A stretch of 64,000 nucleotides of DNA from Haliotis rufescens (taxonomy: Eukaryota). This document shows, piece by piece, positions 11,615-63,851 of this stretch (its first letter is position 1; each line of letters begins with the position of its first letter). The translations under genes and the position numbers were made by a program. The stretch is taken from NCBI RefSeq assembly GCF_023055435.1, contig NW_025963779.1:70866001-70930000 (forward strand). The letters run 5' to 3'. The notes beneath the pieces were generated by a model that ran no database searches, had not been told where the DNA came from, and worked only from the letters and a program-made list of their open reading frames with translations.

Positions 11615-11810
11615 AAAAAGGTGAACTGGACCGCAAAGGGGCATATCTCTCTCCCCTGTCCGAACTGACCACCTTATTTCGGCTGAGATTTCACTATAAG
11701 TTCAGTAAGAACGGTGGACAATCTTACACCGAAACAGTTCCAGAAGATTCACACACGGGTACACAGCTCTGCCGCCGTCGGTTGACAAATGTCCGGGGGG
11801 CAGGAGGCTA
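11615..11810 (+). pseudogene. Orphan degenerate copy of the gene A cytoplasmic (ITAM) exon
   Basis: Acceptor ATTTTATGTTCCAG and body (CTCTCCCCTGTCCGAACTGACCA.., GGGTACACAGCTCTGCCGCCGTCG) align to 46719-46962. In-frame TGA at the third codon and the YEAL segment is deleted. Confidence 0.85.
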
Positions 11811-39776: not shown

Positions 39777-42700
39777 ATGAAGGTAGGTGCTGTACATTAT
39801 GATTCTTAAGATATGGTTTCTTCTTACGTTTGATTACTTGATTGCGAAGTATTGCTTCCTTCATGCATTATGTTGGCGGTCGGGTAGCCTAGTGGTTGAA
39901 ATGTTCGATCGTCACCCTGAAGACCGGGGAAGCCCATTTCTGGTGTCCCCCGCCGTGATATTGCTGGTATATTGCTAAGAGCGGCGTAAAACCATATTCA
40001 CTCACAATGCATTACGCTTTAAAGCTGGCCATGAATACACTGCCCGTAGTCATAGTGTGCGAAATGAACAACTTTGAACAACCTTAGTCTGTTAATTCCA
40101 GTATATTGCATCATTGTGTTTGGTTGATGCTGGTTATTTATTATCGTGTCTTGTCACGGCCTTCAATCTGTGCAGTGAGATGAGCCATTATCATCTGAAA
40201 TAATCATGTAAAATAAACTGCCTTTCAGGTGTGGGTTGTGCTCTTCGTGTCTGCATGCATGCTGGTGGAAGCTGAATCCGGTCTTGCTAAAGGTACATCA
40301 CTCTGCATGTCATTGTGTCAAAAAATACGTCTATAGTCTCCAGGATCTATTGTCCTGTAGAAACTGCAAAAAGCAAAGTCATAACAGTAACGTTAAAGTA
40401 ATACAGGTGAGGTGAAATGGGGTTTAACGACGCGTCCAAGACTATTGCACTTATATAGCGACGTGCATGTACATGTGTATGTTTGTGTGGCTGCTTGTAC
40501 TAGTCCTGACTGATGCCGATTTATAGTGCTAGCTCACTGAGATACCATGCCGTAGTTTAACATGAATACCCCACTCAGACATAGTGCACTGACTCCGAGC
40601 CGACCAGTCCTTGTTTTAGGCCCTTAAAGCCGAGCGCCAGACAGAGTAACAACAAGTACCATCTTTTAACGTCTTTTGGTATGACGTGGCCGGGGATCGA
40701 ACCCAGGACCTTCCGCTCTCCGGGCGGACGCTCTACCTCTTGACTACGGAGGCGGTCTAAAGTAATACAGACGCTGACTGTTTTCCTTATGACTTCAACA
40801 TCAATATATCTTGCACATGATTTTGTTTGGTTAATATCTTTCAGACAATTCAAAATGCCAGGATGCATTAGCTTGGTGTAAAGGCGTCAACTGTGACAGC
40901 CCTGGAATGGCAGATACGTGCCCGGTGACGTGTGGACGCTGCAACCCCACAGGTTTAATGTTTTCTTCTATCTGATGTAGTAGAGCCATGTGAATGTACA
41001 TCGACCTTGAACTAAACTGAGGGGCAAAAGAAAGTATACTGAGTTTGCTCTTGGAACTGGAACATGAAAGAAATTATGCTTAATTTGATTATGTCTATTT
41101 AACAATCACTCATTCCTGCAACGCTTTAAACCTAAATTGCTTCAATGTAGACTGGGGTAAGAAATATATTTGCAACCACATGACCAGTACCATGTTTGAA
41201 ATATAAATGTTTGCCGATGAAAGCAAATATATTGATTTTCTAAGATATGATGTCTAAGATATCCATCAGCAGTTGTGTATTTAACGAATGTAACTTTTAC
41301 TATATACTTCAATGTGAAAGACTGAGGTTTCCGAAGTTGAGAAAAGTGTTTTTTTTCATTGCAGTGAACATAACACTTGATATTTCACAGCAGTGAACTC
41401 AACACTTGATATTTCACTGCATTGAACATAACACTTTGACGGAACCATTGTCATACGAGAGCTGCCTCCCCCTAAATGTCTCCCTTCGTCGTAAGTGACT
41501 AGCTCGTATACAAACTACTGACGTTCTATTTGACGTGAGGTCCACATTGACAAGGCAAAATAATGACAGACGATCGTTTATGGAGCTAATGTCACTTCTT
41601 GCTGTTTGTTATTCTCTCGGAAATGTTTCCTTGTCAATCGAGACTGTTCGTTTTGCAAAGGGACAATTTTATTACTTGACAAGAGTGTATTCTTTCGCTT
41701 CCAACAGCGGTCTCCTAGTTTTCAAGAATATTTTTTGTTAAAGTTGATTATGTTTATAATCATATTTAAATTGATCACATCATCAGCTATCAATACCATT
41801 AAATGTGTTGGATGAACATCATGCTTGATACTATTTGTTTACCAAAAGTGAAAACAACAGTTAATTCAACGTTCGAGTTGTCTTTAAACTACATTAACAA
41901 CCATGACATGTCAAAGCTCTAAAAAAAATTATCAAATGTATTTCATCACTGTTTACTGTTTACTTTTTTAATCACCAACTATACTTCATTTGGAATATAT
42001 GCTAACGGTACGAAGAGGGGAATATTCTGTGACTTGTTCGAAGGGTGGTTTTTGCAGCCCAAATCGTTCGGACGGAGGTTAACACAACTGCACTTGGCAT
42101 ACTCTTACTCAAATACAACATCGTGTATAAAATCTAACAACATTATCAATGAACTTTAGATTTAATTGGCTTAATACCACGAAAATAACATTCTTCTATT
42201 TTGTAGACTGTGGACCTGGTATGTACTGGAATGGCACCACTTGTGCACAATGCTTGGACGGGCTGCCTGCTGAAAACAAGGGAAGTTGTCCATGTATCAT
42301 ACCAGGCAGATGGGGATCAAAGTGTGAACATCAGTGCAACAAAGGGTGTTCGGGTGGTACATGCCACCCACTGTCTGGAGAATGTGAAAACTGTAAACGG
42401 GACAGGTATGGCAAGTCCTGTGATAACACATGTGATGCCAACTGTAATAACTGTACAAATACATCCTCAAACTGTCACCGAACAACTGGAACCTGTCTGT
42501 GTGGATGTAGACCAGGCCTCTATGGAGGTACATGTGAACTACAGTGCCTTGACAACTGTAGATTCAAGACATGTAATTCCTCTGGAATCTGTGTTCATGG
42601 TTGTAAGGAAGGATACTTCGGACCAAAATGTGATGAAAACTGTGGAGAATGTGTTAATCAATCTTGTTCAAGAATAGGTACATGTTTGAAAGGTTGCAAC

Positions 42701-45700
42701 AGTGGATGGCACGGTTTGAAATGCAAAACCCGCTGCAGTTACAACTGTGAACATTCAAACTGCCATCAGAACGGAACGTGCATGGCGTGCATGGGTGGGT
42801 TTCATGGCGACCAATGCAACAAAAACTGTTCTGCTGGATGTGCCACGAGACAGTGTAACAGAGATAGCAATGTAAAGTGCCTTAATACAAGTTGTAGTCA
42901 GACCTCTGGGGAATGTGACTATGGTTGTGTAACGGGCTGGTATGGAGCCGCGTGTAGTGACACATGTCCGGACAACTGTTCTGCTGGCACATGCAACAGA
43001 GATGGTGGATCGTGTCTATCTTGTAGGGAGGGATTCAGAGGAACACACTGTAACATGTCATGTCCTCCAGATTGTGTTGAATGTCAGCAGAATGCCAGTA
43101 ACTGCACATCATGTGAACCTGGTTATTTTGGAAACACGTGTAAAAAAGAGTGCGACGGTTGCCTGGATGGGAGGTGTAAGATCTCAGATGGGTTGTGCAT
43201 AGCCGGCTGTAAACCAAGCTTGTATGGACGCGAATGTCACTACACCTGCAGCAGAAATTGTTTGAGGCAAAATGGTGCCTCGTTGTGTTTTCCAAGTAAC
43301 GGAACCTGTGTTTACGGTTGTAACACTGGATGGTACAAGGCAGAGTGTGATACTCCATGTCCCCCAGGGTGTAGCGGGACTACGTGTGATAACTTCACTG
43401 GCAGATGTTCAAATGGTTGCACAGACGCACTGTATGGTCCACACTGTGATCAGTTATGTCGCTGTCTGATGTCCCGATGTAACGCGACGGGCTCATGTAC
43501 GGGGTGTCAGAATGGCTACTATGGCCAGAGCTGTTCTTCAACATGTCAATCGAGATGTGATACCTGTGAGCAGTACACCGGCGACTGTGTTACCTGTGTG
43601 GAAGGCTGGCACGGTCAACTGTGCAAAGGTAAGAAGAGTGATGTGCTGATATTGGAGTCAATTCTTAGTTGTTCAAGCTACTGATCGATCATTTCTGAAA
43701 AGGTTTAAAATTTACATTCAGGATATTGTCCCGTTTATTTAAGTCACCGCCCGATGGACCCATATTGTCATCTCTGCGTCTGTAATTTGTCATTTAAGCT
43801 AAAGGGCCTGTCACACACTACCGATGTACCTCGCCGGGACTAAACCGGAGCAAAAAATTAACAACGGCGAGAAAATCGGCGGAGCTCCGGCGAGAAAGCA
43901 CTTGAAAAATCAAAATTGATAGTAGCAATACCGATGTAGTACCGGCGTTCCCGTTGTGATACCGTTGTTCTACAGTTGTCCTACCGATGTAAGGATGTAC
44001 AGAATAACACGTTTCTGTCACCTTAGTGTTACCGATGCGCCGCCGATGTTATACCGATGTACCGCCGTTGACCGGAGCTATAGCGGAGTGATACAGTTGC
44101 GCTGCCGATGCACTACCGATGTGCTACTATGTGTACATCGGAAGGACAACGGTGTGACGGTGGAGCTCCGGTATCACATCGGCGGCGCATCGGTACTACT
44201 TCGGTGATATTCGGTAGTACTACGGTATCACATCGGTACCAGTACGGTACACATTGAAGCCACCGGAGAGCCTGTTCTTAGCGATGTGATATCGTTGCGC
44301 TGCCGTACTAGTACCGATCCCCGAAAATCGCAAATTTGTGCTCTGGTATAGCTCCGGCGACCCAAATCGGCTAGGTGTGACAGGCCCTTAAGCCAGTGAA
44401 TCAGGCTCACCCTCGCTTCAGACATATAAGGACATGTCAGCAGTATGTCCTTATAGTACTGAAGTGATGCGGGTCTTAGACGTTTTCCACAGTGGTGAAA
44501 CCCATGAACATCCGAAACCTACAAAACATTAGTAGAGTGAACCGTTATTCGAATCCACGTTCATAGGTTTGCGACTCCTTAGATAACTTCTCCCATTCCC
44601 TCTTCAACCTCAACACTCACCCTCACCCTCACCTTAAACCCATCTCCCACCCTCACCCTCACACTCACCCCATCTCTCACCCTCGCCCTCAACACTAATC
44701 CTCACCCTCACCCCATCTCTCACCCTCACCCTCACCCTCTCCCCATCTCTCACCCTCGCCCTCAACACTAATCCTCACTCTCACCCTCAACCAATCTCCC
44801 ACCCTCACCCTCACCCCATCTCTCGACCTCGCCCTCAACACTAATCCTCACCCTCACCCTCACCCCATCTCTCACCCTCGCCCTCAACACTAATCCTCAC
44901 CCTCACCCTAAACCCATCTCCCACCCTCACCCTCACCCCATCTCTCACCCTCGCCCTCAACACTAATCCTCACCCTAACCCTCAACCCATATCCCACCCT
45001 CAACCTCACCCCATCTCTCGACCTCGCCCTCAACACTAATCCTCACTCTCACCCTCATCTCTCACCCTCGCCCTCAACACTAATCCTCACCCGCACCCTC
45101 AACCCATCTCCCACCCTCACTCTCACCCTCACCCCATCTCTCACCCTCGTCCTCAACACTAATCCTCACCCTCACCCTCAACCCATCTCCCACCCTCACC
45201 CTCTCCCTAAACCCATCTCCCACCCTCACCCTCACCCTCACCCTCACCCCATCTCTTACCCTCGCCCTCACCCCATCTCTCGACCTCGCCCTCAACACTA
45301 ATCCTCACCCTCACCCTCACCCTCACCCCATCTCTCACCCTCACCCTCACCCCATCTCTCGACCTCGCCCTCAACACTAACCCTCACCCTCACCCCATCT
45401 CTCACCCTCGCCCTCAACACTAATCCTCACCCTCACCCTAAACCCACCTCCCACCCTCACCCTCAACCTCACCCCATCTCTCACCCTCGCCCTCAAGATT
45501 AATCCTCACCCTCAACCTCACCCCATCTCTCGACCTCGCCCTCAACACTAATCCTCACCCTCACCCTCAACCCATCTCTCACCCTCGCCCTCAACACTAA
45601 TCCTCACCCTCACCCTCACCCCATCTCTTACCCTCGCCCTCACCCCATCTCTCGACCTTGCCCTCAACACTAATCCTCACCCTCACCCTCACCCCATCTC

Positions 45701-46962
45701 TCACCCTCACCCTCACCCCATCTCTCGACCTCGCCCTCAACACTAATCCTCACCCTCACCCTAAACCATTCTCCCAACCTCACCCTCACCCTCACCCCAT
45801 CTCTCACCCTCGCCCTCAACACTAATCCTCACCCTCACCCTCAACCCATCTCCCACCCTCACCCTCACCCCATCTCTCGACCTCGCCCTCAACACTAATC
45901 CTCACCCTCACCCTCACCCCATCTCTCATCCTCGCCCTAAACACTAATCCTCACCCTCACCCTCGCCCTCGCTTCGTTCTCACCTTCACCTTCACCCTCA
46001 ACTCCACCCTCAACCTCAACCTCAACCCCACTCTCACCTTTACCCTCAACCCCACCCTCACCTCAACCCCACTCTCACCCTCAACTTCACCCTCATCCGC
46101 ATCCGCATCCGCATCCGCATCTGCAACCTCACCCTCATCCTCATCCTCACCTTCACCCTCATCCCCACTCCAACCCCTACTCCCATCTCCAGCTTCAATC
46201 CTTTATCGACACATTGAACTTAAGTCTCTTCTGTTCATAATTCCATTTTAACAGAGCTGAATGATATTGTCATATTCCGAAACATGTTGATCTATATATT
46301 AACAGTTGGTGAATTATGTACCCTTACTAGTTTGTTTAGCTACATGAATGTTCCACTTTTGCAGTGTCATACGTGCAGTCACTTCGTCATCGGGTCCGTG
46401 TTATGTCAACATGCATTGGAGTTGTCCTCTTTGGTGTTGGAATTGTAGTGGCCTTCATTATCATCAGGTAATACATCCTTTGTTCTTATATACAAGAATG
46501 TCCAGCAGTGCATGAAGAATAAGTAACCTAAGTATCTGCAGGTATAGACTTAGAATGCATTGAAATGTATGCTAAAAAAAATATTAATGTTTCAACATGG
46601 TCAATATCATAGCTTGTTAGGAATAAAGTGTCTTCCTTTATTGACAGTAGATCATAGTTTTCATTAACAAATACTTGATCGTGACTTGAATAGCTAATTA
46701 ATGAATTTTATGTTCCAGAAAAAAGTGCACTGGATCTCTCAGGGGCATTTATCTCTCCCCTGTCCGAACTGACCATCTTGTTTCGGATGACATTTCACTC
46801 CAAGAGTTCAGCGAGGACGGTGAAAGTGGACAATCTCACTATGAAACTATTCCAGACGATTCCCTGGGAGTATATGAGGCGCTTACACCTTCAACTTCAC
46901 GTACTTCCGGGTACACAGCTCTGCCGCCGTCGCTTGATAATGTCCGGGTGACAGGGGTCTAA
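39777..46962 (+). CDS. Gene A: ShK + multiple EGF-like (MEGF10/Draper/SCARF-type) type I receptor with ITAM tail, 648 aa predicted
   Basis: Exons 39777-39782 (MK), 40229-40292 (VWVVLFVSACMLVEAESGLAK, signal peptide), 40845-40952 (CQDALAWCKGVNCDSPGMADTCPVTCGRC, ShK pattern), 42207-43628 (474 codons, ~13 EGF-like repeats), 46365-46467 (TM CIGVVLFGVGIVVAFIII), 46719-46962 (tail with YETIPDDSLGVYEAL, SGYTAL, stop). All introns GT-AG, phases compatible, total 1947 nt with no internal stop. Confidence 0.88.
40407..40757 (-). mobile_element. Family 2 SINE inserted in gene A intron 2
   Basis: 13-bp TSD TAAAGTAATACAG (40394-40406, 40758-40770). The paralogous site in gene B (~51138-51150) is empty. 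Confidence 0.92.
43803..44388. mobile_element. MITE with TAA TSD (PIF/Harbinger-like)
   Basis: TIR AGGGCCTGTCACAC / GTGTGACAGGCCCT with TAA on both sides (43800-43802, 44389-44391); internal ACCGATG subrepeats. Confidence 0.9.
44600..46200. repeat. (ACCCTC)n-derived complex minisatellite in gene A intron 4
   Basis: ~1.6 kb of CCCTCA variants with a higher-order unit ACCCCATCTCTCACCCTCGCCCTCAACACTAATCCTC. Confidence 0.95.
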
Positions 46963-53500: not shown

Positions 53501-56500
53501 CGGCTCCCGCCGCGGACCCAACTGTCAGCTACCGCTTGACAAGACGACTTCCGCCGCCGGGCCCATATACGTGGCAACTGTTTGCCCCAACGTATGTTAT
53601 TCTACGATTCCCCGGCTGAAAAGTCGGGAAAGACAAGGTTCCCACTGAGAAGCAGGTAACCCCGGAAAGGTTCCCGCTGAAAAGCAGGTAGCCTTAAGCA
53701 CGAGTATTAATTTGGAAGCAAGTTAATTTGTTACAAGCAGTGTAGCCCACAAGAACCCCGCCACAAAGCACCAGAGTGCTACCCCACACCCACGGCCACG
53801 CGATACGCGGAGATAGCATTGTTGCCCGGCTTGCCTATGTACTGAAAGGAAACACTAACCTGTGGAGATAATATCCTTACTGGCGCAAAACGAGCGCCAG
53901 GGCATGCAATAAATTGTCCGTAAACACACACAGTCCTTTATCACTGAGGTGGACGCCCTCCCAGGCGTACCATGTCTTGTCTGATGCCAGGATCTGGGGA
54001 TGTGGCACTGTTGTACCGCCGAGCTCTTTGACTCGGTTGGTCAGTCGGCGGTTGATATTCTTCCGCATCCCCTCGATCTTTCGTGGATCCCTGGCATCGT
54101 GCCAGTAGCGCCTAAAGCGATTAGATACAGTGACACACGTGTGTACTTGGGGAAGGGCTGCTCGCGAATGACGGACTAACAAAGGGCGGGATGATGCTTG
54201 CGCGGGATTATTCCCCGGGCACGGTGCCGAGTGGTGGCCGGGGTGATTGAGTTACGAGGGGTGATTGGGTTACAGACGTAATTAGCCCATGGTTTGGATA
54301 CGCGCGATAAAGTCATTTAGTAGTTAGTACTAAATGTAAATTTTTTTTAAGATTTTGCAAACACGAAACTTCTTTTTAAGTCGCAAAAACAAGGGGTGAT
54401 AAACCGTCCCTGTGTGTTAGGTAGGGAAATTTGCTTTTCAAGGATTTACATTTGTAAAGAAATACCAATTTTCTGGTAGACAACCACATAAAAAGTATCA
54501 AATAAATGGGATATTCCATGAGTAAAATATCCAGTTTCTCTCATCTCGTGACGGGAGAAAAACAGATATTTTCACTCGTGGCGTATAGAATATTTAGAAG
54601 TGTTAAATCAAATCATATTTTACAAAATATAAACATGTAATATTTTGTGAGTGCAGACTAATCGCCAGAATAATATAATATTGGTAGCTTAAGATAAGTT
54701 TACTTGAAAATCAAAATATAATAAAATCAACTGAGGTATGTAATCTTTTGCTCATCAGTTTATTTTCATTTTAAGTCATTAAGTCTTAATATGCATTTTG
54801 ATGGAGTATTACGGAAAACTACGGATTATTTTTAATTCATTTACGTATGCATATATTTGGCCGGCTGATTCTATTTTTGAGTGCACTGATACGTGGTTGA
54901 TGTTACATGCAATTACTGTTTGATTTCGATTATGATAACTGACATTTAGCAAGTCAGTATAAGTATAAGAATGAGGAAGGTAACATTGCTGTACTTCTTT
55001 GTACTTGCGACAGTGTCCACATTTCATGTAAATATCTGTCGAGTTCATTAGTGTCTCACTGGGTTCCATTCCGGTATTCTTCACGATTATGATCGTGGGT
55101 CTGTTGGCCACAGACAAGAACTTATAGGTTTCTCCGAAGTGGTATACTTCTACGACTTGGGTTCGATTTGGATCTCTTCGACAGACATGATGACGTCATA
55201 AAGCTTAACGTAACGTCGTTCATTCACAATTGACTCTTTTCCCACGATTAATAAAACATCTGTTTTACTCCTAATGATTAACGTATTTTATGTGTCAGTG
55301 GATTTTGCTGGAACTTAAATTTAGCTCGTAAAATTCCGTAGAATCCTTTGCATCACACTGTTAGATTGGATATTTTTGTTTGTTGAGTTTCAAAACAGTA
55401 AATTATGACAACACAGTGTTAAAGGAGCACCTATTCTCATTACATCACATTTCGTTTCAATTCACACCTACCTTTTTCAAAAGTAACTAAGTGCTTTGAA
55501 GTCCTGTGTTCGATTCCCGACACGGGTACAATGTGTGAAGCCCATTTCTGGTGTCTCCCGCCATGATATTGCTGGATTATTGCTAAAAGCGGCGTAAAAC
55601 CATACTCACTCATTCACTTGTGTGACCCCGACATACCATTTCATAATATGCTCACATGATCAGCTATCAATACCATTAAATGTGTGGGATGAAAACCTTG
55701 CTTGATACTTTGTTTACGTAAAGTGAAAACAACAGTTAATTCAGCGTTCGAGTTTTCTTTAAACTAGATTGACAACCATGAAATTGCAAAACTCTAAAGC
55801 TTTTATCAAATTTATTTCATCACTGTTTACTGTTTACTTTTTTAATCACCAACTATACTTCATTCCGATTGATATAATTTATATGCTAACAATCCCAGAT
55901 GAAATATTCTGTAAGTATGAACTAGTTCGGAGGCTGGTTTTTGCAGCCCAAATCGTTTATAAACGTTCGGACGGGGGTTAACACAACTGCACTTGACAAA
56001 CTCTTACTCAAATACAATAACATCGTGTATAAACTCCAACAATATGATCAATGAACTTTAGAATTCATTGGCTTAATGCCACGAAAATAACGTTCTTCTA
56101 TTTTGCAGACTGTCGACCTGGTATGTACTGGAATGGCACCACTTGTGCACAATGCTTGGACGGGCTGCCTGCTGAAAACAAGGGAAGTTGTCCATGTATC
56201 ATACCAGGCAGATGGGGATCAAAGTGTAAACATCAGTGCAACAAATGGTGTTCGGGTGGTACATGCCACCCACTGTCTGGAGAATGTGAAAACTGTAAAC
56301 GGGACAGGTATACCAAGTCCTGTGAAGAGACATGTGCCAACTGTAATAACTGTACAAATACATCCTCAAACTGTCACCGAACAACTGGAACCTGTCTGTG
56401 TGGTTGTAGACAAGGCTTCAGTGGAGGTACATGTGAACAACGCTGCCCTGACAACTGTAGATTCAAGACATGTAATTCCTCTGGAATCTGTGTTGATGGT

Positions 56501-59500
56501 TGTAAGAAAGGATACTTCGGACCAAAATGTGATGAAAAATGTGGAGAATGTGTTAATCAATCTTGTGCAAGAATAGGCACATGTTTGAAAGGTTGCAACA
56601 GTGGATGGCACGGTTTGAAATGCAACACCCCCTGCAGTTACAACTGTGAACTTGCAAATTGTGATCATAACGGAACGTGCATGGCGTGCTTGGGTGGGTT
56701 TCATGGCGACCAATGCAACAAAAACTGTTCTGCTGGATGTGCCACGAGACAGTGTAACAGAGATAGCAATGTAAAGTGCCTTAATACAAGTTGTAGTCAG
56801 ACCTCTGGGGAATGTGACTATGGTTGTGTAACGGGCTGGTATGGAGCCACGTGTAGTGACACATGTCCGGACAACTGTTCTGATGATACATGCAACAGAG
56901 ACGGTGGATCGTGTCTATCTTGTAGGGAGGGGTTCAGAGGGACACACTGTAACATGTCATGTCCTCCAGATTGTGTTGAATGTCAGCAGAATGCCAGTAA
57001 CTGCACATCATGTGAACCTGGTTATTTTGGAAACACGTGTGAAAAAGAGTGCGACGGTTGCCTGGATGGGAGGTGTAACATCACAGATGGGTTCTGCATA
57101 GCCGGTTGTAAACCAAGCTTGTATGGACGAGAATGCCAGTTTAATTGCAGCAGAAATTGTTTGAGGCAAAATGAAGTCTCATCGTGTTTTCAAAGCAACG
57201 GAACCTGTGTTTACGGTTGTAACACTGGATGGTACAAGGCAGAGTGTGATATTCCATGTCCACCAGGGTGTAGCGGGACTACGTGTGATGACTTCACTGG
57301 CAGATGTTCAAATGGTTGCACAGATGCACTGTATGGTCCACACTGTAATCAGTCATGTCGCTGTCTGATGTCCCGATGTAACGCGACGGGCTTATGTACG
57401 GGGTGTCAGAATGGCTACTATGGCCAGAGCTGTTCTTCAACATGTCCATCGAGATGTGATACCTGTGAGCAGAACACCGGCGACTGTGTTACTTGTGTGG
57501 AAGGCTGGCACGGTCACCTGTGCAAAGGTAAGAAGATTGATGTGCTGATATTAGAGTCAAGTCTTAGTTGTTCAAGCTACTGATCGATCATTTCTGAAAA
57601 GGTTTAAAATTTACATTCAGGATATTGTCCCGTTTATTTTAAGTCATCGACAATTAGGCCCAGATGGACCCATATTGTCATCTCTGCGTCTGTAATTTGT
57701 CATTTAAGCTAAAGGGCCTGTATCACACTACCGATGTACCTCGCCGGGACTAAACCGGAGCAAATATTTAACAATGGCGAGAAAATCGGCGGAGCTCCGG
57801 CGAGAAAGCACTTGAAAAATCAAAATTGATAGTAGCAATACCGATGTAGTACCGGCGTTCCCGTTGTTCTACCTTTGTCCTACCGATGTAAGAGCCGATG
57901 TGCTACAGAATACCACTTTTCTGTCAACTTAGTGTTACCGATGCGCCGCTGATGTTATACCGATGTACCATCGTTGACCGGAGCTATAGCGGAGTGATAC
58001 AGTTGCGCTGCCGACGCACTACCGATGTGCTACTATGTGTACATCGGAAGGACAACGGTGTGACGGTGGAACTCCGGTTTCACATCGGCGGCGCATCGGT
58101 ACTACTTCGGTGGTATTCGGTAGTACTACGGTATCACATCGGTACCAGTACTGTACACATTGAGGCCACCGGAGAGCCGGTTCTTATACGTGATATCGTT
58201 GCGCTGCCGTACTTGTACCTATCCCCGAAAATCGCCAAATTTGTGCTCTGGTATAGCTCCGGCGACCCAAATCGGCTAGGTGTGACAGGCCCTTAAGCCA
58301 GTGAATCATTATTGTAACCCACTGTCTGGAGAATGTGAAAACTGTAAACGGGACAGGTATACCAGATCCTGTGAAGAGACATGTGCCAACTGTAATAACT
58401 GCATAAATACATCCTCAAACTGTCACCGAACAACTGGAACCTGTCTGTGTGGTTGTAGACCAGGCCTCTGTGGAGGTGCATGTGAACGACGCTGCCTTGC
58501 CAACTGTAGATTCAAGACATGTAATTCCTCTGGAATCTGTGTTGATGGTTGTAAGGAAGGATACTTCGGACCAAAATGTGATAAAAAATGTGGAGAATGT
58601 GTTAATCAATCTTGTTCAAGAATAGGTACATGTTTGAAAGGTTGCAACAGTGGATGGCACGGTTTGAAATGCAACACCCCCTGCAGTTACAACTGTGAAC
58701 ATTTAAATTGTCATCAGAACGGAACATGCATGGCGTGCTTGGGTGGGTTTCATGGCGACCAATGCAACAAAAACTGTGCCACGAGACAGTGTAACAGAGA
58801 TAGCAATGTAAAGTGCCTTAATACAAGTTGTAGTCAGACCTCTGGGGAATGTGACTATGGTTGTGTATCGGGCTGGTATGGAGCCACGTGTAGTGACACA
58901 TGTCCGGACAACTGTTCTGATGATACATGCAACAGAGACGGTGGATCGTGTCTATCTTGTAGGGAGGGATTCAGAGGGACACACTGTAACATGTCATGTC
59001 CTCCACATTGTGTTGAATGTCAGCAGAATGCCAGTAACTGCACACCATGTGAGCCTGGTTATTTCGGAAACACGTGTGAGAAAGAGTGTGACGGTTGCCT
59101 GGATGGGAGGTGTAATATCACAGATGGGTTCTGCATGGCCGGTTGTAAACCAAGCTTGTATGGACGAGAATGTCGGTTCAATTGCAGCAGAAATTGTTTG
59201 TGGCAAAATGATGTCTCATCGTGTTTTCCAAGTAACGGAACCTGTGTTTACGGTTGTAACACTGGATGGTACAAGGCAGAGTGTGATACTCCATGTCCAC
59301 CAGGGTGTAGCGGGACTACGTGTGATGACTTCACTGGCAGATGTTCAAACGGTTGCATAGATGCACTGCATGGTCCACACTGTAATCACACATGTAGCAG
59401 CAACTGCAGGAATAGTAGCTGTCAAATGGATAGCGCTAACAGAACTGTACTGTCCTGTACAGTTGGATGTGAAGATGGCATGTGGGGCGACTACTGTGCC

Positions 59501-62500
59501 AGTACCTGCCCTGGCCACTGTCCAAAATGCAACAGAACCTTTGGTTCCTGTGTGAAACGTGAGAACCATAGATACCTTATATAGATAGAAGGATTGACAC
59601 ACTAGAGCTCGGCACGCCGACTGTCATACAAAATGTTTAAACGACCAATAATAAAATATTCCTATCTGTTCTCAGTACATGAATATGCTCGATAGTCAGT
59701 AGAAAGCGTTAACCCTCCATGTACTTAAAATAAACTGTTAGTAAAGATTAGTATTGATCTGCACATCGTGACGTCACATTTTCCACTTTTCCCTTTAACT
59801 TTAAATGTTGACCAAATGCAGGTATGGCTTGTATTAAACTAATTAGGATTTATGCAAACAAGATGTAATGAGCGAGAGCGGAACCAAAACAGTAGATCAA
59901 GACAGTAGTTTCTTGTATCTATCGTGGGGGCGGTCGGGTAGCCCATTGGTTAAAGCGTTCGCTCGTCACGCCGAAGACCTGGGTTCGATTCCCGACATGG
60001 GTACAATGTGTGAAGCCCTTTCATGGCATCCCCCGCCGTGATATTGCTGGAATATTGCTTAAAGCGGCGTAAAACCATACTCACTCACTCACTCACTGTA
60101 TCCATCGTGGTACGTCGAGAGATCATGCATTGTCACAGCAATCATCAGGCTCTATAACGGGTTTGGCTTTATAGTGACGAGGCTAATAAAATGAAGTATA
60201 TTTTGATATTATTTGAAAACAGATATGGTTTTTTGATATTTTGGCACCACTTCTTTGCATGAAACATTTATATTGACGAAAACTATAACATATACACGTA
60301 AACATTAAGAGACCAAAAGTAACTCCAGTTCAGATAGTGTTTAGAGGTAAAATAATGTACATTTGAGTTAATTTATTTAGGAATATACTGAGGAAGTATT
60401 AAGATGATGGGCAACAAGCATTTATACATAACGTCTGCATGTACTTAACGTTTTATCAGATAGGTATTTCTAAAATCTTTGTTACATAATGTAACTGTAC
60501 GAATGAAAAATGACGTGTGCATTTTATTGCGCTAGCACTTGTTAATATTGGGAAATCGTTGACCATGTTAACAGTTTCGGTTAAGTAATGTGGTTAGAAT
60601 ATTAAATACATTTTAGCTACACATCTAGGTTAATAGTTTATTCATTAGGAAACAATACAATATGTGCATGTTGGTGTGATATGTTTACTGCAAATAGATG
60701 AGAACGTGCTCATTTATGTATTTCCCTCAGGGTCACTTCATGGATGACGTCAGAGAGTTTCATGTCACGCAACGCAGTTACAATGCAGTGACGATAATTA
60801 AAAAAGCGTTGAGGCACTGCTCGCATAAGCATTCGCACATGTCCTAAAATGGGAAATAACATGATTTTTGTGTAAAGGAAAATATTCTCGCCCATGGGCC
60901 AAACCTTTTTCTCGCCAATGGGCGAAATATTTCAATATCGCTATAAAATCGTTGAATTAAGCTAAAATGAGTTAAATTTTGTGTCATGATACTTGAAGGA
61001 AAACAAGTTAAGTATTTGCCAAACAAAAACATGAGTTTTGTGTAAAGGAAAATATTCTCGCCCATGGGCCAAGCCTTTTTCTCGCCCATGGGCGAAATAT
61101 TTCAATATCGCTATAAAATCGTTGAATTAAGTTAAAATGAGTTAATTTTGTGTCATGATACTTGAAGGAATACATCTACGTATTTGCCAAACAAAAACAT
61201 GAGTTTTGAGTAAAGGAAAATATTCTCGCCCATGGGCCAAGCCTTTTTCTCGCCCATGGGCGAAATATTTCAATATCGCTATAAAATCGTTGAATTAAGT
61301 TAAAACGAGTTAAATTTTGTGTCATGATACTTGAAGGAATGCATTAAAATATATTTGCGAAACAAACACATAAGTTTTGTGTAATGGAAAATATTCTCGC
61401 CCATGCATGGGCGAAATATTTCAATATCGCTATAAAATCGTTGAATTAAGTTAAAATGAGTTAAATTTTGTGTATGATACTTGATGGAATACAAGTTAAG
61501 TATTTGCGAAACAAAAACATGAGTTTTGAGTAAAGGAAAATATTCTCGCCCATGGGCGAGATGGTGTAAATATTGAGTTTTTAAACTCTTTTTTTTCTTC
61601 TTTTTTTTTCCCTTAGTATGTTACCATGAAAACAGCATGCTTATTTTTGTAAATACCTTTGACCGAGACTGGGAAAAGACCGTAGATTTTCTGGACTTTT
61701 GGGTTTCCAGAATTAAAATTGGACGTGTTTTCTCTTTTTGTTTCATATGTAACACTGTATCATTTAAATTGGACTTTTAGTCTATGATTCACGGTTTCAC
61801 TGCCACAGAAGGGTGACAGATTGACAGTATGACCTTAGAACACTCCCAAACTTGGCATTATGAACGAGCAGATGCCATAAAATCATAATGGTATATGCAT
61901 AAATAGATTAAAGAAGTGAAATTAGACAATGTTCGCGAATCAACTTAATATTTTTACGAAATATTTATGTCCACTTATATCTCCAAAGAAAATTATCAAG
62001 TGTAAAATTTCTTCTAACATTGTACGATACCGACTATGTTATAAGTATGTGTCTAGGAATCACAATCAAATATTCAGTGAGGATACCAGGTGTTCAACAT
62101 GAGGTCAGAAATTATTATCGAAAACTTTCCTTTACGAAAAAGTTGCTTATTTTTTCATTTATTTGAAGACACATTGCTCTAATCTTTCTACATTCTCAGC
62201 AACTATTCGTGCCGTGTCTTATGTTTCCATTTAGAACTGGGAATCTACAATAAATTCTTGCTCTTGATGAATATGCGCCAACAATGCAACGTTTGGTCCA
62301 CAGACATAATTATTTAATGGAATGTGCCATAAAATATAAAGGATAAAAAACATATGTACAAAATATTACGCAATGCAATCATAACCTACGTTTGTCTTTT
62401 GTGGAAAGAAACAAATAACTTCTATAAATACTGTCGTGTATTTCATATCATGCATTACAGAAACACCTCAAACCAACACTGTTGTCCCTTGGCTGGTGGT

Positions 62501-63851
62501 TCTGTTTGTGATCATCATCATTCTTCTTATAATGGCTCTATTTGTCGTAAGAAGGTAAGAACAAACAAACCGCATGGTCAATCTTATCTCTAATACGAAT
62601 AGAAACATGATTTCACAGCTGACCAAACCCAAGTGTCACAGTAACCGAAGACTTGCATCATGTGCAGTTTATTCTTACATTTTAATACTTTTTCAGGTTC
62701 TGGTACTGATTGTTATCCTGGGTTTTTTTTCAGGAATAAACCCCACAATATCCTGAAATGGAGATACACTGTCAGTCATTCTCCAAGCAGCACGACTGTA
62801 ATGTCCCTAATCAATCCTTCGTATCAGTCGACGCCAAGAGGTAACTGGGTATTCGTGAATACACGGTCAATCATAAGATGACTTAAAAATGTCAGCATTT
62901 TTTTGGTATTAAGAATAACACAATGATGATCTTCTTTGAACAATATATAAAAACAAAATAGATTGCATTGTACTCACAGTTGCTATGATCTGTGTCCAAT
63001 TGTGATAGTTGTGAAGGCGACTGTACTCCACTGGTTAAACATATCCAGTATAGGTCCAATTGTTCCGATTGGTGTCATGTGTGATGCTTAGACAGTATCT
63101 AGTTGTTTTAAAATATCGCTAAAACTGCCAACTCCTTATAATGTGTTTCAGGTTCCAGAACTCCTGAGGATTCTGACTACCAAGAGCTAGAGCCACTGAC
63201 GAATACAGTCAGAGAGGATGATTACATCACACCAAAAGATACAGACGATGCTTACACACTTACGTCTAGAGCCAGTCACCTTATCTCCCCCAATGAGTCC
63301 GGTAATGATGGGGGATTTACACCTGACCGTAGTCCTCCTCCGTGTCATGTGACAGACGATTCACATCCGAACACCATGTTGTCAACAGAAGTGATGGTGC
63401 AAGGTCTGAGACTCTACGTCGAACAGATGAAGAGGAGTGGTGGTTTCACAACGCAGTGCTATGTATGTCAGTTCTTGATTCTATTTGAAGGCATGCAGGG
63501 TATGGTATATCAATCATTTACGAATACCTTCCCTACGTTTAAAGGTAGATTTAAAATTTTCAATTTCAGACTTATCCACATTAGTCTTTTGTGCATAATA
63601 TATCCATATGTTATTGTTATTATATTATTATACTCAGTTAATAAAACCATATATATCTATAGCCATGATAATCATTCGTAAACACGAATACGTATGACCT
63701 TCAACGTTTTCTCACATTCACTGGTCATTCCTATTTCTGATATTTGAACATGACATGTATTAGAACCTTCCCTGTGGCAAGCTTGGCCCCTGTGACGAAG
63801 CCGAGTTACCAGAGAATGCTTCCAAAAACAGATACAGAAACGTATTACCCT
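50523..63851 (+). CDS. Gene B: ShK + EGF-repeat receptor-type tyrosine phosphatase (runs off the window)
   Basis: Exons 50523-50528 (MK), 50973-51036 (signal peptide), 51225-51332 (ShK), 56109-57527 (473 codons EGF), optional 58302-59558 (EGF), 62461-62554 (TM VVPWLVVLFVIIIILLIMALFVV), 62734-62840 (..INPSYQ..), 63152-63462 (SDYQEL..CHVTDDSHP..GGF, paralogous to exon 96-385), 63764-63851 (ENASKNRYRNVLP, paralogous to 569-656). Phases are compatible. The ectodomain-to-TM link is inferred, and the catalytic site lies outside the window. Confidence 0.75.
52144..54339 (-). mobile_element. Internally deleted Ngaro-type (DIRS order) retrotransposon with split direct repeats
   Basis: Repeat X 52144-52580 = 53316-53761 and repeat Y 52884-53110 = 54114-54339. 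On the minus strand the order is A1-ORF-B1-A2-B2. ORF remnant 53877-54113 ends EGVHLSDKG (SGNH hydrolase DxxH-like block). Absent from gene A intron 3. Confidence 0.7.
57713..58293. mobile_element. MITE with TAA TSD, paralogous copy of 43803-44388
   Basis: Same TIRs, TSD and flanks, so it was copied with the segmental duplication. Confidence 0.9.
58302..59558 (+). CDS. Third EGF-repeat exon (C): 5'-truncated copy of the A/B exon with a different 3' end
   Basis: Open frame of 419 codons. 58317-59388 aligns to the B exon, 59389-59558 is divergent EGF sequence, and there is a phase-1 donor AAAC|GTGAGA. The acceptor CCAG at 58301 is in phase but has a weak polypyrimidine tract. Confidence 0.6.
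59928..60096 (+). mobile_element. tRNA-derived SINE family 1 with TSD
   Basis: TSD TGTATC(T/C)ATCGTGG on both sides and (ACTC)n tail. Confidence 0.9.
60855..61560. repeat. ~170-bp tandem satellite (about 4 units) with CGCCCATGGGCG palindromes
   Basis: Units start near 60858, 61028, 61196, 61366 and 61516. Confidence 0.9.

What the first reader, a model, noticed from the sequence alone, without database searches (positions are those of the whole stretch)
39777..63851. Candidate invertebrate paired-receptor system: the same ShK-EGF ectodomain wired to an ITAM tail (gene A) or a tyrosine phosphatase (gene B)
Seen: adjacent co-oriented genes share signal peptide, ShK exon and a 1.4-kb EGF exon (about 46 differences in 474 aa by eye, ~90% identical) but have unrelated TM and cytoplasmic exons. 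A ends in YETI-x7-YEAL; B continues into NPxY, SDYQEL and a PTP domain. Established: paired receptors (KIR, LILR, SIRP, Siglec, PIR) use similar ectodomains with opposing ITAM versus phosphatase-recruiting tails, and Draper/MEGF10 signal through ITAM and Syk/Shark. Inference: an activating/inhibitory pair for the same or related ligands (immune, allorecognition or phagocytic), in which the inhibitory member carries its own phosphatase rather than recruiting SHP. I do not know of this arrangement being described, but I could not search.
Basis: partly seen in the sequence, partly recalled or inferred. Interest (0 to 1): 0.92.

Follow-up and report, generated by a model that had tools for sequence, protein, structure and literature searches.

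The report
Abalone ITAM/phosphatase paired receptor cluster
In red abalone, neighbouring receptor genes share almost the same ShK-EGF outer part but carry either an ITAM-like tyrosine tail or their own tyrosine phosphatase; this looks like an invertebrate activating/inhibitory receptor pair, though "gene B" itself is a recent deletion chimera not shown to make a whole receptor.

Summary
The window is Haliotis rufescens chromosome DNA. Gene A (39777-46962) is an intact, phase-consistent ShK-EGF-TM gene ending in YETI-x7-YEAL, and RNA contigs carry A-specific letters. Gene B shares A's 5' module, introns included, and runs into an intact single PTP domain beyond the window.

Three corrections:
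- **B is a chimera.** An ITAM-type 5' half is joined at 58308-58318 to a PTP-type gene from about codon 38 of its own EGF exon (B2, to 59558).
- **No transcript links B's ectodomain to the PTP.** NCBI's model of B (463 aa) starts inside the TM exon. RNA contigs confirm only TM-cyt1-cyt2 splicing, B2, and sequence just upstream of the TM exon.
- **The pairing is a family property.** The locus alternates ITAM-type and PTP-type genes. The intact PTP partner is gene E (NCBI model, 1024 aa).

ITAM/PTP pairs with near-identical ectodomains recur in three subfamilies and four Haliotis species. The H. asinina pair matches at 198 of 200 residues, against 64-67% for same-type proteins between species. 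The AU test rejects grouping ectodomains by tail type.

Opposed signalling through shared ligands is inferred, not shown. I found no description of it in the held papers: a new variant of paired receptors. The scan's other notes on this stretch agree.

The parts
39777..39782 (+). Gene A, coding exon 1 (ATG AAG, then GT donor)
   Evidence: It matches the first two residues (MK) of NCBI's model of paralogue C (P0001).
40229..40292 (+). Gene A, signal-peptide exon (hydrophobic core VWVVLFVSACMLV), ends in phase 1
   Evidence: It aligns with the signal peptide of P0001.
40845..40952 (+). Gene A, ShK-domain exon, phase 1-1
   Evidence: Pfam ShK PF01549 scores 21.0 bits against a cut-off of 20.9.
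42207..43628 (+). Gene A, single 1422-nt exon of MEGF/laminin-type EGF-like repeats (474 codons, 88 Cys), phase 1-1
   Evidence: It is 88% identical to P0001, named 'draper-like' by NCBI.
39630..43452 (+). 5' module shared with PTP-type gene E (promoter, signal-peptide and ShK exons, introns, most of the EGF exon). Homology stops sharply about 175 nt before the end of the EGF exon.
   Evidence: blastn of A against E: 91-96% identity, introns included.
44604..46167 (+). C/T-rich 49-nt tandem array inside gene A's intron between the EGF and TM exons; not coding
46365..46467 (+). Gene A, TM exon (no charged residue in the helix), phase 1-2
   Evidence: It is 94% identical to P0001.
46719..46962 (+). 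Gene A, cytoplasmic tail exon ending at the stop. Conserved tyrosines: IYLSP, YETI, x7, YEAL, x9, YTAL.
   Evidence: Copies of 93-95% identity lie in genes C and D, and the tail is conserved in three other Haliotis species.
50523..51332 (+). Gene B, 5' exons copied from an ITAM-type gene: ATG exon 50523-50528, signal-peptide exon 50973-51036, ShK exon 51225-51332
52144..55638 (.). 3.5-kb insertion in B's intron that is absent from A. It has internal 1.2-kb direct repeats and no Pfam hit.
56109..57527 (+). Gene B, EGF exon B1: a full ITAM-type EGF exon with an ITAM-type 3' end, all 88 Cys kept, phase 1-1
   Evidence: No RNA contig specific to B1 was seen.
57528..58308 (+). Remnant of the ITAM-type intron that follows the EGF exon (homologous to A 43629-44403)
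58308..58318 (+). Deletion or fusion junction: ITAM-type intron sequence joined through about 9 filler bases to the middle of a PTP-type EGF exon
   Evidence: Alignment of B with A's intron and with the 5' ends of the E and B1 exons
58302..59558 (+). EGF exon B2: the PTP-type gene's own EGF exon, lacking its first ~38 codons and its native acceptor, with the PTP-type 3' end. A possible cryptic acceptor CCAG|TG at 58302 is in phase 1; the donor follows 59558.
   Evidence: B2-specific RNA contigs were found: X9 at 59013-59145 with 1 mismatch where the paralogues differ at 7-12 sites, and X3 at 58593-58984.
62461..62554 (+). Gene B, TM exon, phase 1-2. NCBI's 463-aa model P0133 starts at the Met inside it.
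   Evidence: The GT..AG joint 62554|62734 appears in runs X1 and X3. Contig X2 at 62424-62555 runs unspliced across the acceptor.
62734..62840 (+). Gene B, juxtamembrane exon with NPSY
   Evidence: Joints 62554|62734 and 62840|63152 are seen in RNA contigs.
63152..63463 (+). Gene B, exon with SDYQEL (ITIM-like S-x-Y-x-x-L) and the start of the PTP domain
63764..63851 (+). Gene B, first PTP-domain exon (KNRY). Seven further PTP-domain and C-terminal exon segments lie beyond the window, up to G000:C1:70934032.
164..4475 (+). 3' half of the upstream PTP-type gene U (subfamily 2): juxtamembrane and PTP exons with intact motifs
   Evidence: It matches NCBI model P0016.
11602..11826 (+). Degenerate, frameshifted copy of the ITAM-type tail exon (pseudo-exon)

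Best explanation
**What the locus is.** The window is part of a supercluster on one Haliotis rufescens chromosome, spanning about 70.61-70.98 Mb. Its genes are single-pass receptors with a signal peptide, one or more ShK domains and a long run of MEGF/laminin-type EGF repeats.

**Two cytoplasmic forms.** The genes alternate along the DNA, usually as ITAM, ITAM, PTP.
- One form has a short tail with four conserved tyrosines: YLSP; YxxI; YE(A/Q)L 6-13 residues later; YTxL 8-9 residues after that. These are ITAM-like.
- The other has a juxtamembrane region (NPxY, and SDYQEL in this subfamily) followed by one catalytically complete PTP domain.

**How the ectodomains stay alike.** Recombination between neighbours keeps the 5' module nearly identical between the two forms within a species, while it diverges fast between species. 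The module covers the promoter, signal peptide, ShK and about 85% of the EGF exon. The membrane-proximal EGF modules, TM and tails stay form-specific.

**The genes in this window.**
- Gene A is an intact, expressed ITAM-type member.
- Gene B is a fresh product of this recombination. A deletion fused the 5' half of an ITAM-type gene to a PTP-type gene inside its EGF exon.
- The intact PTP partner of A, C and D is gene E, 38 kb past the window's end.

**Inferred mechanism.** Both forms bind the same ligands. Ligand clustering lets Src-family kinases phosphorylate the ITAM-type tails, which recruit a Syk/Shark-type tandem-SH2 kinase. The PTP-type twin is drawn to the same ligand patch instead of being excluded, dephosphorylates those tails and so sets the threshold.

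**Shown:** gene structures, cluster order, mosaic homology, discordance between ectodomain and tail, motif conservation, intact PTP, expression of A and of B's 3' part.
**Inferred:** ligand sharing, ITAM function, opposition of the two forms, and any full-length product of B.
For: **Organism and gene models.**
- P0001 and other hits lie on a contig of 94,228,061 bp, the length of C1.
- NCBI models confirm both architectures: P0001 (C, ITAM-type, 665 aa), P0135 (E, PTP-type, 1024 aa) and P0016 (U-type).

**Cluster map.**
- tblastn with each exon gives the order i1, p1, i2, i3, p2, i4, i5, U, pseudo-tail, A, B, C, D, E.
- A third subfamily lies at 70.616, 70.630 and 70.642 Mb.

**Mosaic homology.**
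- A, B1 and D match E at 90-96% from the promoter to one common sharp boundary inside the EGF exon, at A 43452, D 93954 and B1 57358, all opposite E 104661-104668.

**Ectodomain versus tail.**
- In the ectodomain tree the tail type needs 5-6 changes, as many as shuffled labels.
- ITAM/PTP pairs are sisters in H. asinina (100/98), H. rubra (100/97) and H. rufescens subfamily 3 (100/100).
- The AU test rejects a PTP-type clade: p 7e-142 overall and 2.7e-7 within subfamily 1.
- The H. asinina pair is identical at 198 of 200 residues, against 64-67% for same-type proteins between species.

**Selection.**
- Ectodomain dN/dS is 0.42-0.95, yet none of the 46 A/B1 replacements hits any of the 88 Cys.
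- The cytoplasmic part of B against E gives dN/dS 0.31, with 7 B-specific and 7 E-specific changes.

**Motifs.**
- The tail tyrosines are conserved in three subfamilies and four species.
- The PTP motifs of B are intact.

**RNA.**
- The GT..AG joints 62554|62734 and 62840|63152 are present.
- Contigs carry A-specific letters at the 7 diagnostic sites called in organism-A runs X1, X3 and X9, with none contradicting.
- B2-specific contigs exist.

**Background from papers.**
- An ITAM receptor recruits Syk in oyster (PMC6994640).
- Draper signals through an ITAM and is triggered by exclusion of a transmembrane PTP (PMC6219719).
- Draper-II carries an ITIM that binds the phosphatase Corkscrew (PMC9008705).
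Against: - There is no functional data of any kind: no ligand, no phosphorylation, no Syk binding, no PTP substrate.
- The YxxI-to-YExL spacing is 6-7 only in this subfamily. It is 11 and 13 in the other two, outside the canonical 6-8, although Draper's ITAM tyrosines Y934 and Y949 (PMC6219719) imply x11.
- Near-identity of 5' modules could be a neutral by-product of unequal crossing-over in a tandem array.
- Co-expression of the two forms in one cell type is untested. The RNA contigs are short and shallow (depth 2-12), and their tissue is unknown.
- Gene A itself was not returned as an annotated protein.
- For B, no contig joins any EGF exon to the TM exon. NCBI's model has no ectodomain. RNA also covers the 'intron' just upstream of the TM exon (62221-62381 and 62424-62555), which fits an internal start.
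Confidence: 0.55

Rival explanations
1. Neutral by-product. The ITAM-type and PTP-type genes are two unrelated receptor classes, for example a Draper-like engulfment or adhesion receptor and an ordinary receptor PTP. They happen to lie in one tandem array, where unequal crossing-over and gene conversion homogenise their 5' halves. They would not work on the same ligands in the same cells, and there would be no activating/inhibitory logic.
For: - The array is highly recombinogenic. There is a 38-kb tandem duplicate at 99.93% identity and the B deletion chimera.
- It also holds decaying members: i2 and i4 have lost Cys and have a truncated frame, and a pseudo-tail lies at 11.6 kb.
- Homology between the forms is as high in introns as in exons, as plain conversion would give.
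- EGF-rich receptor PTPs without known ITAM twins are common in bivalves.
Against: - The same pairing is kept in three subfamilies and four species that differ by 35-50% in the ectodomain. This is hard to maintain by accident.
- The conversion boundary is the same for all pairs of the subfamily and spares the form-specific membrane-proximal modules.
- The Cys scaffold is under selection in all copies.
- The tail tyrosines and the PTP motifs are conserved.
Confidence: 0.3
2. One reading: gene B makes a full-length receptor in which the A-like ectodomain is joined to the TM and PTP exons. That ectodomain would be B1 alone, or B1 plus B2 through the cryptic acceptor at 58302.
For: - B1 to TM, B1 to B2 and B2 to TM are all phase 1 and in frame.
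- B1 keeps all 88 Cys and its signal-peptide and ShK exons.
- B2 is present in RNA, while its flanking introns have no cover.
- B's PTP part shows no more change than E's.
- The pyrimidine content of the cryptic acceptor (0.47) equals that of the genuine acceptor at 63764.
Against: - Four runs show no joint into 62461 from 57527 or 59558, and no joint into 58302.
- The contigs with called differences on B1's 3' end carry A's letters; one low-depth X1 contig (about 2.5) carries letters shared by B1, C and D, so B1 is not excluded.
- NCBI's evidence-based model of B starts inside the TM exon (P0133), whereas E received a full-length model.
- One RNA contig runs unspliced across the TM exon's acceptor (X2, 62424-62555).
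Confidence: 0.3
3. B is functionally broken. The deletion removed the PTP-type gene's signal peptide and ShK exons. Its remaining transcripts start at or after B2, or just upstream of the TM exon, and encode at most an ectodomain-less phosphatase. B1 would be an orphan 5' fragment: silent, or a secreted ShK-EGF decoy ending in intron read-through.
For: - NCBI model P0133 (463 aa) starts at the Met in the TM exon.
- RNA contigs lie at 62221-62381 (exact match) and 62424-62555.
- No B1-specific RNA was seen.
- B2 lost its native acceptor.
Against: - B's cytoplasmic exons show purifying selection and no excess of changes over E.
- B1 and B2 frames are fully open with Cys intact, though a very recent deletion would give the same picture.
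- Short, shallow contigs cannot show absence.
Confidence: 0.45
4. Assembly artefact: the 50-58 kb block is a mis-placed haplotype or collapsed copy of gene A or D, and the B1/B2 junction is a mis-join.
For: The region is repeat-rich, and a 99.93% identical 38-kb duplicate lies nearby.
Against: - B1 differs from A, C and D by 5-6% in the exon and 8-12% in introns, which is not allelic.
- The junction joins non-homologous sequence (intron to mid-exon) with filler bases, as a real deletion does, and not at a repeat.
- B2-specific and B-cytoplasmic-specific RNA contigs exist.
- NCBI annotates B's 3' part as its own gene, beside E.
Confidence: 0.03

Closest known systems
Vertebrate paired receptors (KIR, LILR/PIR, SIRP, Siglec, Ly49, NKG2)
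   Same: Linked multigene clusters whose members have closely similar ectodomains but opposite signalling ends. Ectodomains are homogenised between activating and inhibitory members by recombination or gene conversion, and they evolve fast between species.
   Different: - The ectodomain here is ShK plus MEGF-type EGF repeats, not Ig or C-type lectin.
- The activating member carries the ITAM-like motif in its own tail. There is no charged TM residue and no DAP12/FcR-gamma-type adaptor.
- The putative inhibitory member is itself a receptor PTP rather than an ITIM that recruits SHP-1/2.
- Function is untested.
Drosophila Draper-I / Draper-II (CED-1/MEGF10 family)
   Same: An EGF-repeat receptor signals through a tail ITAM to a Syk-type kinase (Shark). 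A second form with the same ectodomain engages a tyrosine phosphatase (Corkscrew, through an ITIM) to shut signalling off (PMC9008705, PMC6219719). NPxY and further tyrosines are present.
   Different: - Draper's two forms are splice isoforms of one gene. Here they are separate genes.
- In abalone the phosphatase is fused to the receptor, not recruited.
- There is no EMI domain: Pfam finds only ShK and weak EGF matches.
- NPxY sits in the PTP-type member, not the ITAM-type one. NCBI's names 'draper-like' and 'MEGF10' rest on EGF similarity only.
Receptor PTPs that oppose ITAM signalling (CD45, CD148, Drosophila Ptp69D)
   Same: A transmembrane PTP with a classical active site (KNRY, WPD, HCSAGxGRTG, Q-loop) acts on membrane-proximal phosphotyrosines.
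   Different: - Those PTPs have bulky, unrelated ectodomains and work by being excluded from the ligand contact (PMC6219719).
- A PTP wearing the ITAM receptor's own ectodomain would be recruited to the contact, which is the opposite logic.
- There is a single PTP domain here. Many RPTPs have D1 plus D2, including bivalve EGF-rich ones (P0038) and H. rufescens P0030.
Molluscan EGF-rich receptor PTPs (annotated 'RPTP kappa/mu/T-like' and 'cell death abnormality protein 1-like' in oysters, mussels and abalone)
   Same: Cys-rich EGF-like ectodomain, TM and PTP. They match at 30-33% identity over 85-90% of the H. asinina PTP-type protein.
   Different: In the two proteins inspected (oyster P0038, abalone P0030) there are two PTP domains. 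P0038 has another N-terminal domain and no ShK, while P0030 keeps a ShK-like start. No ITAM twin was looked for or is known to me.
Oyster CgIgR-CgSyk pathway
   Same: A molluscan surface receptor with a cytoplasmic ITAM binds Syk and drives haemocyte responses (PMC6994640). This shows that the downstream machinery exists in molluscs.
   Different: It has an Ig ectodomain, is a single gene, and has no phosphatase-bearing twin described.

Membership tests
ITAM-bearing receptor | Cytoplasmic YxxL/I-x(6-8)-YxxL/I | tested here: met
   - Gene A has YETI-x7-YEAL; genes C and D have the same.
- H. asinina has YETI-x6-YEAL.
- A second pair, YE(A/Q)L-x8/9-YTxL, overlaps the first.
- In subfamilies 2 and 3 the first spacing is 13 and 11, outside the canonical range, while the second pair has x8.
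ITAM-bearing receptor | Both tyrosines conserved among relatives | tested here: met
   All four tail tyrosines are kept in three subfamilies and four Haliotis species.
ITAM-bearing receptor | Phosphorylated motif binds the tandem SH2 domains of a Syk/ZAP-70/Shark kinase | not testable with these tools
   Only the oyster precedent is available (PMC6994640). An abalone Syk was not searched for.
Paired (activating/inhibitory) receptors | Closely linked genes with highly similar ectodomains and different signalling ends | tested here: met
   Cluster map. Protein identities between the two forms: A/E 82% and C/E 84%; H. asinina pair 99% over 200 aa; H. rubra pair 91%; subfamily 3 pair 85%.
Paired (activating/inhibitory) receptors | Ectodomain history discordant with tail history (exchange between the two forms) | tested here: met
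   Tree, AU tests, a common sharp homology boundary, and chimera B as a caught event.
Paired (activating/inhibitory) receptors | Same or related ligands, opposite effect on the cell, co-expression | not testable with these tools
   No ligand, cell-type or signalling data.
Classical receptor protein tyrosine phosphatase | PTP domain (PF00102) with KNRY, WPD loop, HC(X5)R P-loop and Q-loop | tested here: met
   - P0017 scores 264 bits on PF00102.
- B's exons read KNRY, WPDKGVP, VHC|SAGIGRTG and QTE|DQY with no stop or frameshift.
- NCBI model P0133 is the product of B's exons.
Classical receptor protein tyrosine phosphatase | Signal peptide, ectodomain and TM joined to the PTP in one product | tested here: inconclusive
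   Met for gene E (P0135, 1024 aa) and for H. cracherodii P0017 and P0134. For gene B no joint into the TM exon was seen, and NCBI's model lacks the ectodomain.
Draper / CED-1 / MEGF10 | N-terminal EMI (and NIM) domain before the EGF repeats | tested here: not met
   A Pfam scan of P0001 and of the exons gives ShK and weak EGF_TEN matches only, with no EMI. The N-terminal domain is ShK.
Draper / CED-1 / MEGF10 | Tail with NPxY plus ITAM/YxxL in the same protein | tested here: not met
   The ITAM-type tail has no NPxY. NPSY is in the PTP-type juxtamembrane exon.
ShK domain (PF01549) | Six-Cys ShKT pattern reaching Pfam's gathering score | tested here: met
   21.0 bits against a cut-off of 20.9, so marginal, with all six Cys present.

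The most novel reading that the evidence does not exclude
Abalone have an invertebrate counterpart of the vertebrate paired-receptor clusters, built from non-Ig parts. ShK-EGF receptors come as ITAM-bearing activators and as twins that carry their own tyrosine phosphatase. The ligand-binding halves are kept matched by recurrent recombination while racing between species. The phosphatase twin would be recruited into the ligand contact, the inverse of kinetic segregation, to set a self/non-self or eat/don't-eat threshold. Gene B would show how a new inhibitory specificity is minted in one step, by fusing an activator's ectodomain to a phosphatase gene.
Probability: 0.4. Interest if true: 0.88.

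Novelty: new variant of a known kind. Interest (0 to 1): 0.78.

Why it matters
Paired activating/inhibitory receptors are a hallmark of vertebrate innate immune recognition, and they are thought to arise from host-pathogen or self/non-self conflict. An independent, non-Ig version in a mollusc would show that the design principle is convergent. The key difference is that inhibition would be hard-wired as a fused phosphatase rather than a recruited one.

It would also give a natural test of kinetic-segregation models, because here the phosphatase shares the receptor's ectodomain.

It would point to candidate recognition genes for abalone disease work, such as withering syndrome and Vibrio infection. 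Finally, the locus offers a caught-in-the-act example, gene B, of how ectodomains are swapped between signalling classes.

Tried and rejected
I used the listing of cluster members instead.
- **Reads.** The single read-laying run (57250-63249, four RNA-like contig runs) gave no joint into the TM exon or into B2. The contigs are short (58-493 nt among the pieces listed in the tool's table 8), so this does not show absence.
- **Cross-mapping.** The contigs on B1's 3' end that showed called differences proved to come from gene A. Most contigs on B2's 5' part come from paralogues.
- **Searches.** The search with the juxtamembrane exon found only 5 representatives. It was useful only as an entry to P0012.
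- **Pfam** found nothing for the tail, the juxtamembrane exon, the 253-aa ORF at 28035-28793 or the ORFs of the 52-55 kb insertion.
- **Joined models.** Spliced models of A and B were not sent to any search or fold.
- **Draper/MEGF10 orthology** was rejected: there is no EMI domain, and NPxY is in the other form.
- **Haplotype or mis-assembly** was rejected as the main reading because of the divergence, the nature of the junction and the copy-specific RNA.
- **An odd tool figure.** The 'open_frame_aa 1178' given by the genome search for B1 and B2 is not a real open frame. The ORF listing and my translation show stops between them.
- **Literature.** Searches found no description of ITAM/PTP paired receptors or of this abalone family. 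The library is partial.
- **Not done.** I did not look for an abalone Syk/Shark homologue.
- **N runs** at 24556-24728 and 33842-33982 were left untouched.

Full report
**1. What the DNA is**

The window is G000:C1:70866001-70930000 of a 1.33-Gb genome. Protein hits on a contig of exactly C1's length (94,228,061 bp) identify it as Haliotis rufescens, the red abalone. Two N runs (24556-24728 and 33842-33982) were left alone.

**2. Check of the observation**

Gene A:
- ATG AAG|GT at 39777
- signal-peptide exon 40229-40292
- ShK exon 40845-40952 (phase 1-1; Pfam ShK at the gathering score)
- one 1422-nt EGF exon 42207-43628 (phase 1-1; 88 Cys)
- TM exon 46365-46467 (phase 1-2)
- tail exon 46719-46962, which ends with a stop

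The tail reads IYLSP ... YETI-x7-YEAL-x9-YTAL.

Gene B repeats the first four exons: 50523, 50973-51036, 51225-51332 and 56109-57527. It then has a different TM exon (62461-62554), an NPSY exon (62734-62840), an SDYQEL exon (63152-63463) and the first PTP exon (63764-63851).

A and B1 are 95.2% identical in DNA and 90.4% in protein. The duplication also covers promoter and introns at 88-92%.

I fetched the next 60 kb. B's PTP domain is complete there, with no stop or frameshift: KNRY, DYINAS, WPDKGVP, VHC|SAGIGRTG and QTE|DQY. So the "dead or truncated PTP" refutation fails.

**3. What this finding's text left out**

A third EGF exon copy (B2, to 59558) lies between B1 and the TM exon. Alignment shows the following:
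- After B1's donor, B follows the ITAM-type intron for about 780 nt (57528-58308, matching A 43629-44403).
- At 58308-58318 it switches, through about 9 filler bases, into the middle of a PTP-type EGF exon, around codon 38.
- From there to the end of the window, B is collinear with gene E at 91-94%.

B2's last 60 or so codons are the PTP-type membrane-proximal modules. They are 90% identical to E and unrelated to the 3' end of A and B1.

B is therefore a deletion chimera: the 5' half of an ITAM-type gene fused to a PTP-type gene. The event removed the former's TM and tail exons. It also removed the latter's signal-peptide exons, ShK exon, acceptor and first EGF codons. In the neighbouring intact triplet (C, D, E) the equivalent deletion would span about 8.7 kb.

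**4. The surroundings: an alternating array**

tblastn with each exon over 260 kb and genome-wide searches give this order:

i1, p1, i2, i3, p2, i4, i5, U | pseudo-tail (11.6 kb) | A, B, C, D, E

Here "i" is a gene with an ITAM-type TM and tail, and "p" is one with PTP exons.
- U's PTP exons fill window 164-4475.
- A to E form one subfamily. The upstream genes form a second, about 35% identical in the EGF region.
- A third subfamily lies 240 kb upstream, at 70.616, 70.630 and 70.642 Mb. More distant relatives sit near 19.1 and 78.9 Mb.

NCBI models confirm both architectures:

| Protein | Gene | Length | Form |
|---|---|---|---|
| P0001 | C | 665 aa | ITAM-type, "draper-like" |
| P0135 | E | 1024 aa | signal peptide-ShK-EGF-TM-PTP |
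| P0016 | U-type | 821 aa | PTP-type |

P0019 (H. rufescens) and P0018 (H. rubra) are read-through models. Each strings an ITAM-type gene and the adjacent PTP-type gene together.

**5. Ectodomain against tail**

A, B1 and D match E from about 1 kb upstream of the start codon through the introns, up to one common point about 175 nt before the end of the EGF exon. That point is A 43452, D 93954 and B1 57358, all opposite E 104661-104668. Beyond it the two forms are unrelated.

I built a maximum-likelihood tree of 18 ectodomains from four species.
- Tail type needs 5-6 changes, the same as shuffled labels.
- ITAM/PTP pairs are sisters in H. asinina (100/98), H. rubra (100/97) and H. rufescens subfamily 3 (100/100).
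- The AU test rejects one clade of PTP-type ectodomains: p 7e-142 overall and 2.7e-7 within this subfamily.

The H. asinina pair is identical at 198 of the first 200 ectodomain residues. Same-type proteins of H. asinina and H. rufescens are only 64-67% identical. Their cytoplasmic parts are 75% identical.

This is the signature of repeated exchange, or concerted evolution, of the ligand-binding half between the two signalling classes. B shows one way such an exchange happens.

**6. Selection**

- Ectodomain dN/dS among A to E is 0.42-0.95, with dS of only 0.045-0.12.
- None of the 46 A/B1 replacements touches any of the 88 Cys. About 8.6 would be expected at random, giving P of roughly 1e-4.
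- No copy has lost a conserved Cys.
- The scaffold is therefore held while surface residues change quickly.
- B's cytoplasmic exons against E's give dS 0.063, dN 0.020 and dN/dS 0.31.
- With H. cracherodii and H. asinina as outgroups there are 7 B-specific and 7 E-specific changes, all conservative. B's phosphatase half is thus not decaying faster than E's.

**7. Motifs**

The ITAM-type tail keeps four tyrosines in all three subfamilies and four species: (I/V)YLSP; Y(E/A/D)(T/V)I; YE(A/Q)L; YT(A/P/S)L.
- The first YxxI-to-YExL spacing is 7 in A, C and D and 6 in H. asinina. It is 11 in subfamily 3 and 13 in subfamily 2.
- The YExL-to-YTxL spacing is 8-9 throughout.
- So at least one ITAM-spaced pair exists in every member.
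- For comparison, Draper's ITAM tyrosines are Y934 and Y949, which I work out as x11 (PMC6219719).
- The TM helix has no charged residue, so no adaptor of the DAP12 type is implied.

In the PTP-type juxtamembrane region:
- NPSY is kept in subfamily 1. Subfamily 3 (P0019b) has NPTF and a further relative, P0022, has NPSY. Subfamily 2 has changed it to YPSN/YPSH.
- SDYQEL, an ITIM-like S-x-Y-x-x-L, is specific to subfamily 1.

**8. RNA evidence**

One search and one laying were allowed. The four runs behave as spliced RNA, because exons and repeats are covered and most introns are not.
- The GT..AG joints 62554|62734 (X1, X3) and 62840|63152 (X1, X9, X2) confirm B's TM-cyt1-cyt2 splicing at about 99% identity.
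- Contigs laid on B1's 3' end carry gene A's letters at the 7 diagnostic sites called in organism-A runs X1, X3 and X9, with none contradicting.
- One of these, X3 record 16 (493 nt), stops exactly at the exon's donor and runs on elsewhere. Gene A is therefore expressed and spliced. This was not shown for B1.
- B2-specific contigs exist. X9 at 59013-59145 has 1 mismatch where every paralogue differs at 7-12 sites, and X3 at 58593-58984 is a second. The flanking introns have zero cover.
- No joint enters 62461 or 58302.
- RNA also covers 62221-62381 exactly. One contig (X2, 62424-62555) crosses the TM exon's acceptor unspliced.
- NCBI's model of B (P0133, XP_046345609.1, 463 aa) begins at the Met inside the TM exon and has no ectodomain.

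Splicing of B1 to B2, B1 to TM and B2 to TM would all be in frame. The cryptic acceptor is weak but within the range of real ones.

My odds for B:
- full-length chimeric receptor: about 0.3
- ectodomain-less or otherwise broken product: about 0.45
- the rest undecided

**9. Mechanism**

Shown: the gene structures, the array, the mosaic homology, the discordance, the motif and active-site conservation, and the partial expression.

Established elsewhere:
- ITAM-Syk signalling works in a mollusc (PMC6994640).
- The EGF-repeat receptor Draper signals through an ITAM to Shark and is triggered when a bulky transmembrane PTP is excluded from the contact (PMC6219719).
- A Draper isoform with an ITIM binds the phosphatase Corkscrew and antagonises Draper-I (PMC9008705).

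Inferred: the abalone ITAM-type and PTP-type twins bind the same ligands. The PTP twin is drawn into the contact rather than excluded, and it dephosphorylates the ITAM-type tails, setting the threshold for haemocyte activation or engulfment. Fast, matched evolution of the ectodomains suggests ligands under conflict, whether pathogen, allogeneic or altered-self.

The main rival is that homogenisation is a neutral by-product of a recombining tandem array, with no functional opposition (0.3). Mis-assembly is unlikely (0.03).

**10. Comparison and novelty**

In logic and genomic behaviour this works like vertebrate paired receptors and like Draper-I/II. It is not a member of the Draper/CED-1/MEGF10 family, for two reasons:
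- There is no EMI domain; ShK takes its place.
- NPxY is on the other form.

The PTP half is a classical receptor PTP with a single domain. It is related to the EGF-rich receptor PTPs of other molluscs. The two of these I inspected, oyster P0038 and abalone P0030, have two PTP domains.

Searches of the held literature found no description of ITAM/PTP twins or of this family. The scan's other first-reader notes on this stretch (s1-811113, s1-811169, s1-811199) agree with what I found.

**11. Limits**

- DNA reads across the junction, A's own joints, tissue of expression and an abalone Syk were not examined.

Noticed in passing
L011-L019, G000:C1:70780818-70819000 versus 70823144-70861321 (window -85182..-47000 versus -42856..-4679): A 38-kb block holding one PTP-type and two ITAM-type genes is repeated in tandem at 99.93% identity. 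This is either a very recent 42-kb duplication or an assembly duplicate. Two of the ITAM-type copies (i2 and i4) have a truncated EGF frame and lost Cys.
   Followed up: partly
window 59850-60250; also 39880-39990, 40575-40760 (-), 32289-32504, 47130-47360: Copies of a tRNA-like SINE (the GGTAGCCTAGTGGT... type) are scattered through the introns. The copy in B's intron collects RNA-contig depth of 10^5 in all four runs, so the element, or its relatives elsewhere, is very abundant in RNA.
   Followed up: no
window 44604-46167: A 1.5-kb C/T-rich tandem array (49-nt unit built of TCACCC-like hexamers, GC skew -0.68) fills gene A's intron between the EGF and TM exons. A shorter version lies in gene C's intron.
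   Followed up: no
window 19066-22762 and 29018-30976: Two further tandem repeats lie in the intergenic stretch: about four 861-bp units at 93-97% identity, and two 980-bp units at 99.9%.
   Followed up: no
window 28035-28793 (+): A 253-aa open frame has no Pfam match. It is the longest non-receptor ORF in the window and may be a transposon remnant.
   Followed up: partly
L006/L007, window-equivalent 88681, 89092, 91398: Gene D has three ShK-exon copies in a row. Subfamily-3 model P0019 also has three ShK domains in its first (ITAM-type) half. ShK number therefore varies within the family.
   Followed up: no
L004, window-equivalent 68250-70370, and L005, 73580-74980: Two long coding-looking satellites lie downstream of gene B's last exon. 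They are open in all three frames and repeat units of about 20 codons.
   Followed up: no
window 11602-11826: A frameshifted relic of the ITAM-type tail exon lies alone, 7 kb after gene U's last matched PTP exon, with no EGF exon near it. It may be what remains of a deleted ITAM-type gene at the border between the two subfamilies.
   Followed up: partly
No annotated protein identical to gene A or gene D was returned, although both look intact and A-specific RNA contigs exist. NCBI's set appears to hold only C among the three ITAM-type genes of this subfamily.
   Followed up: partly
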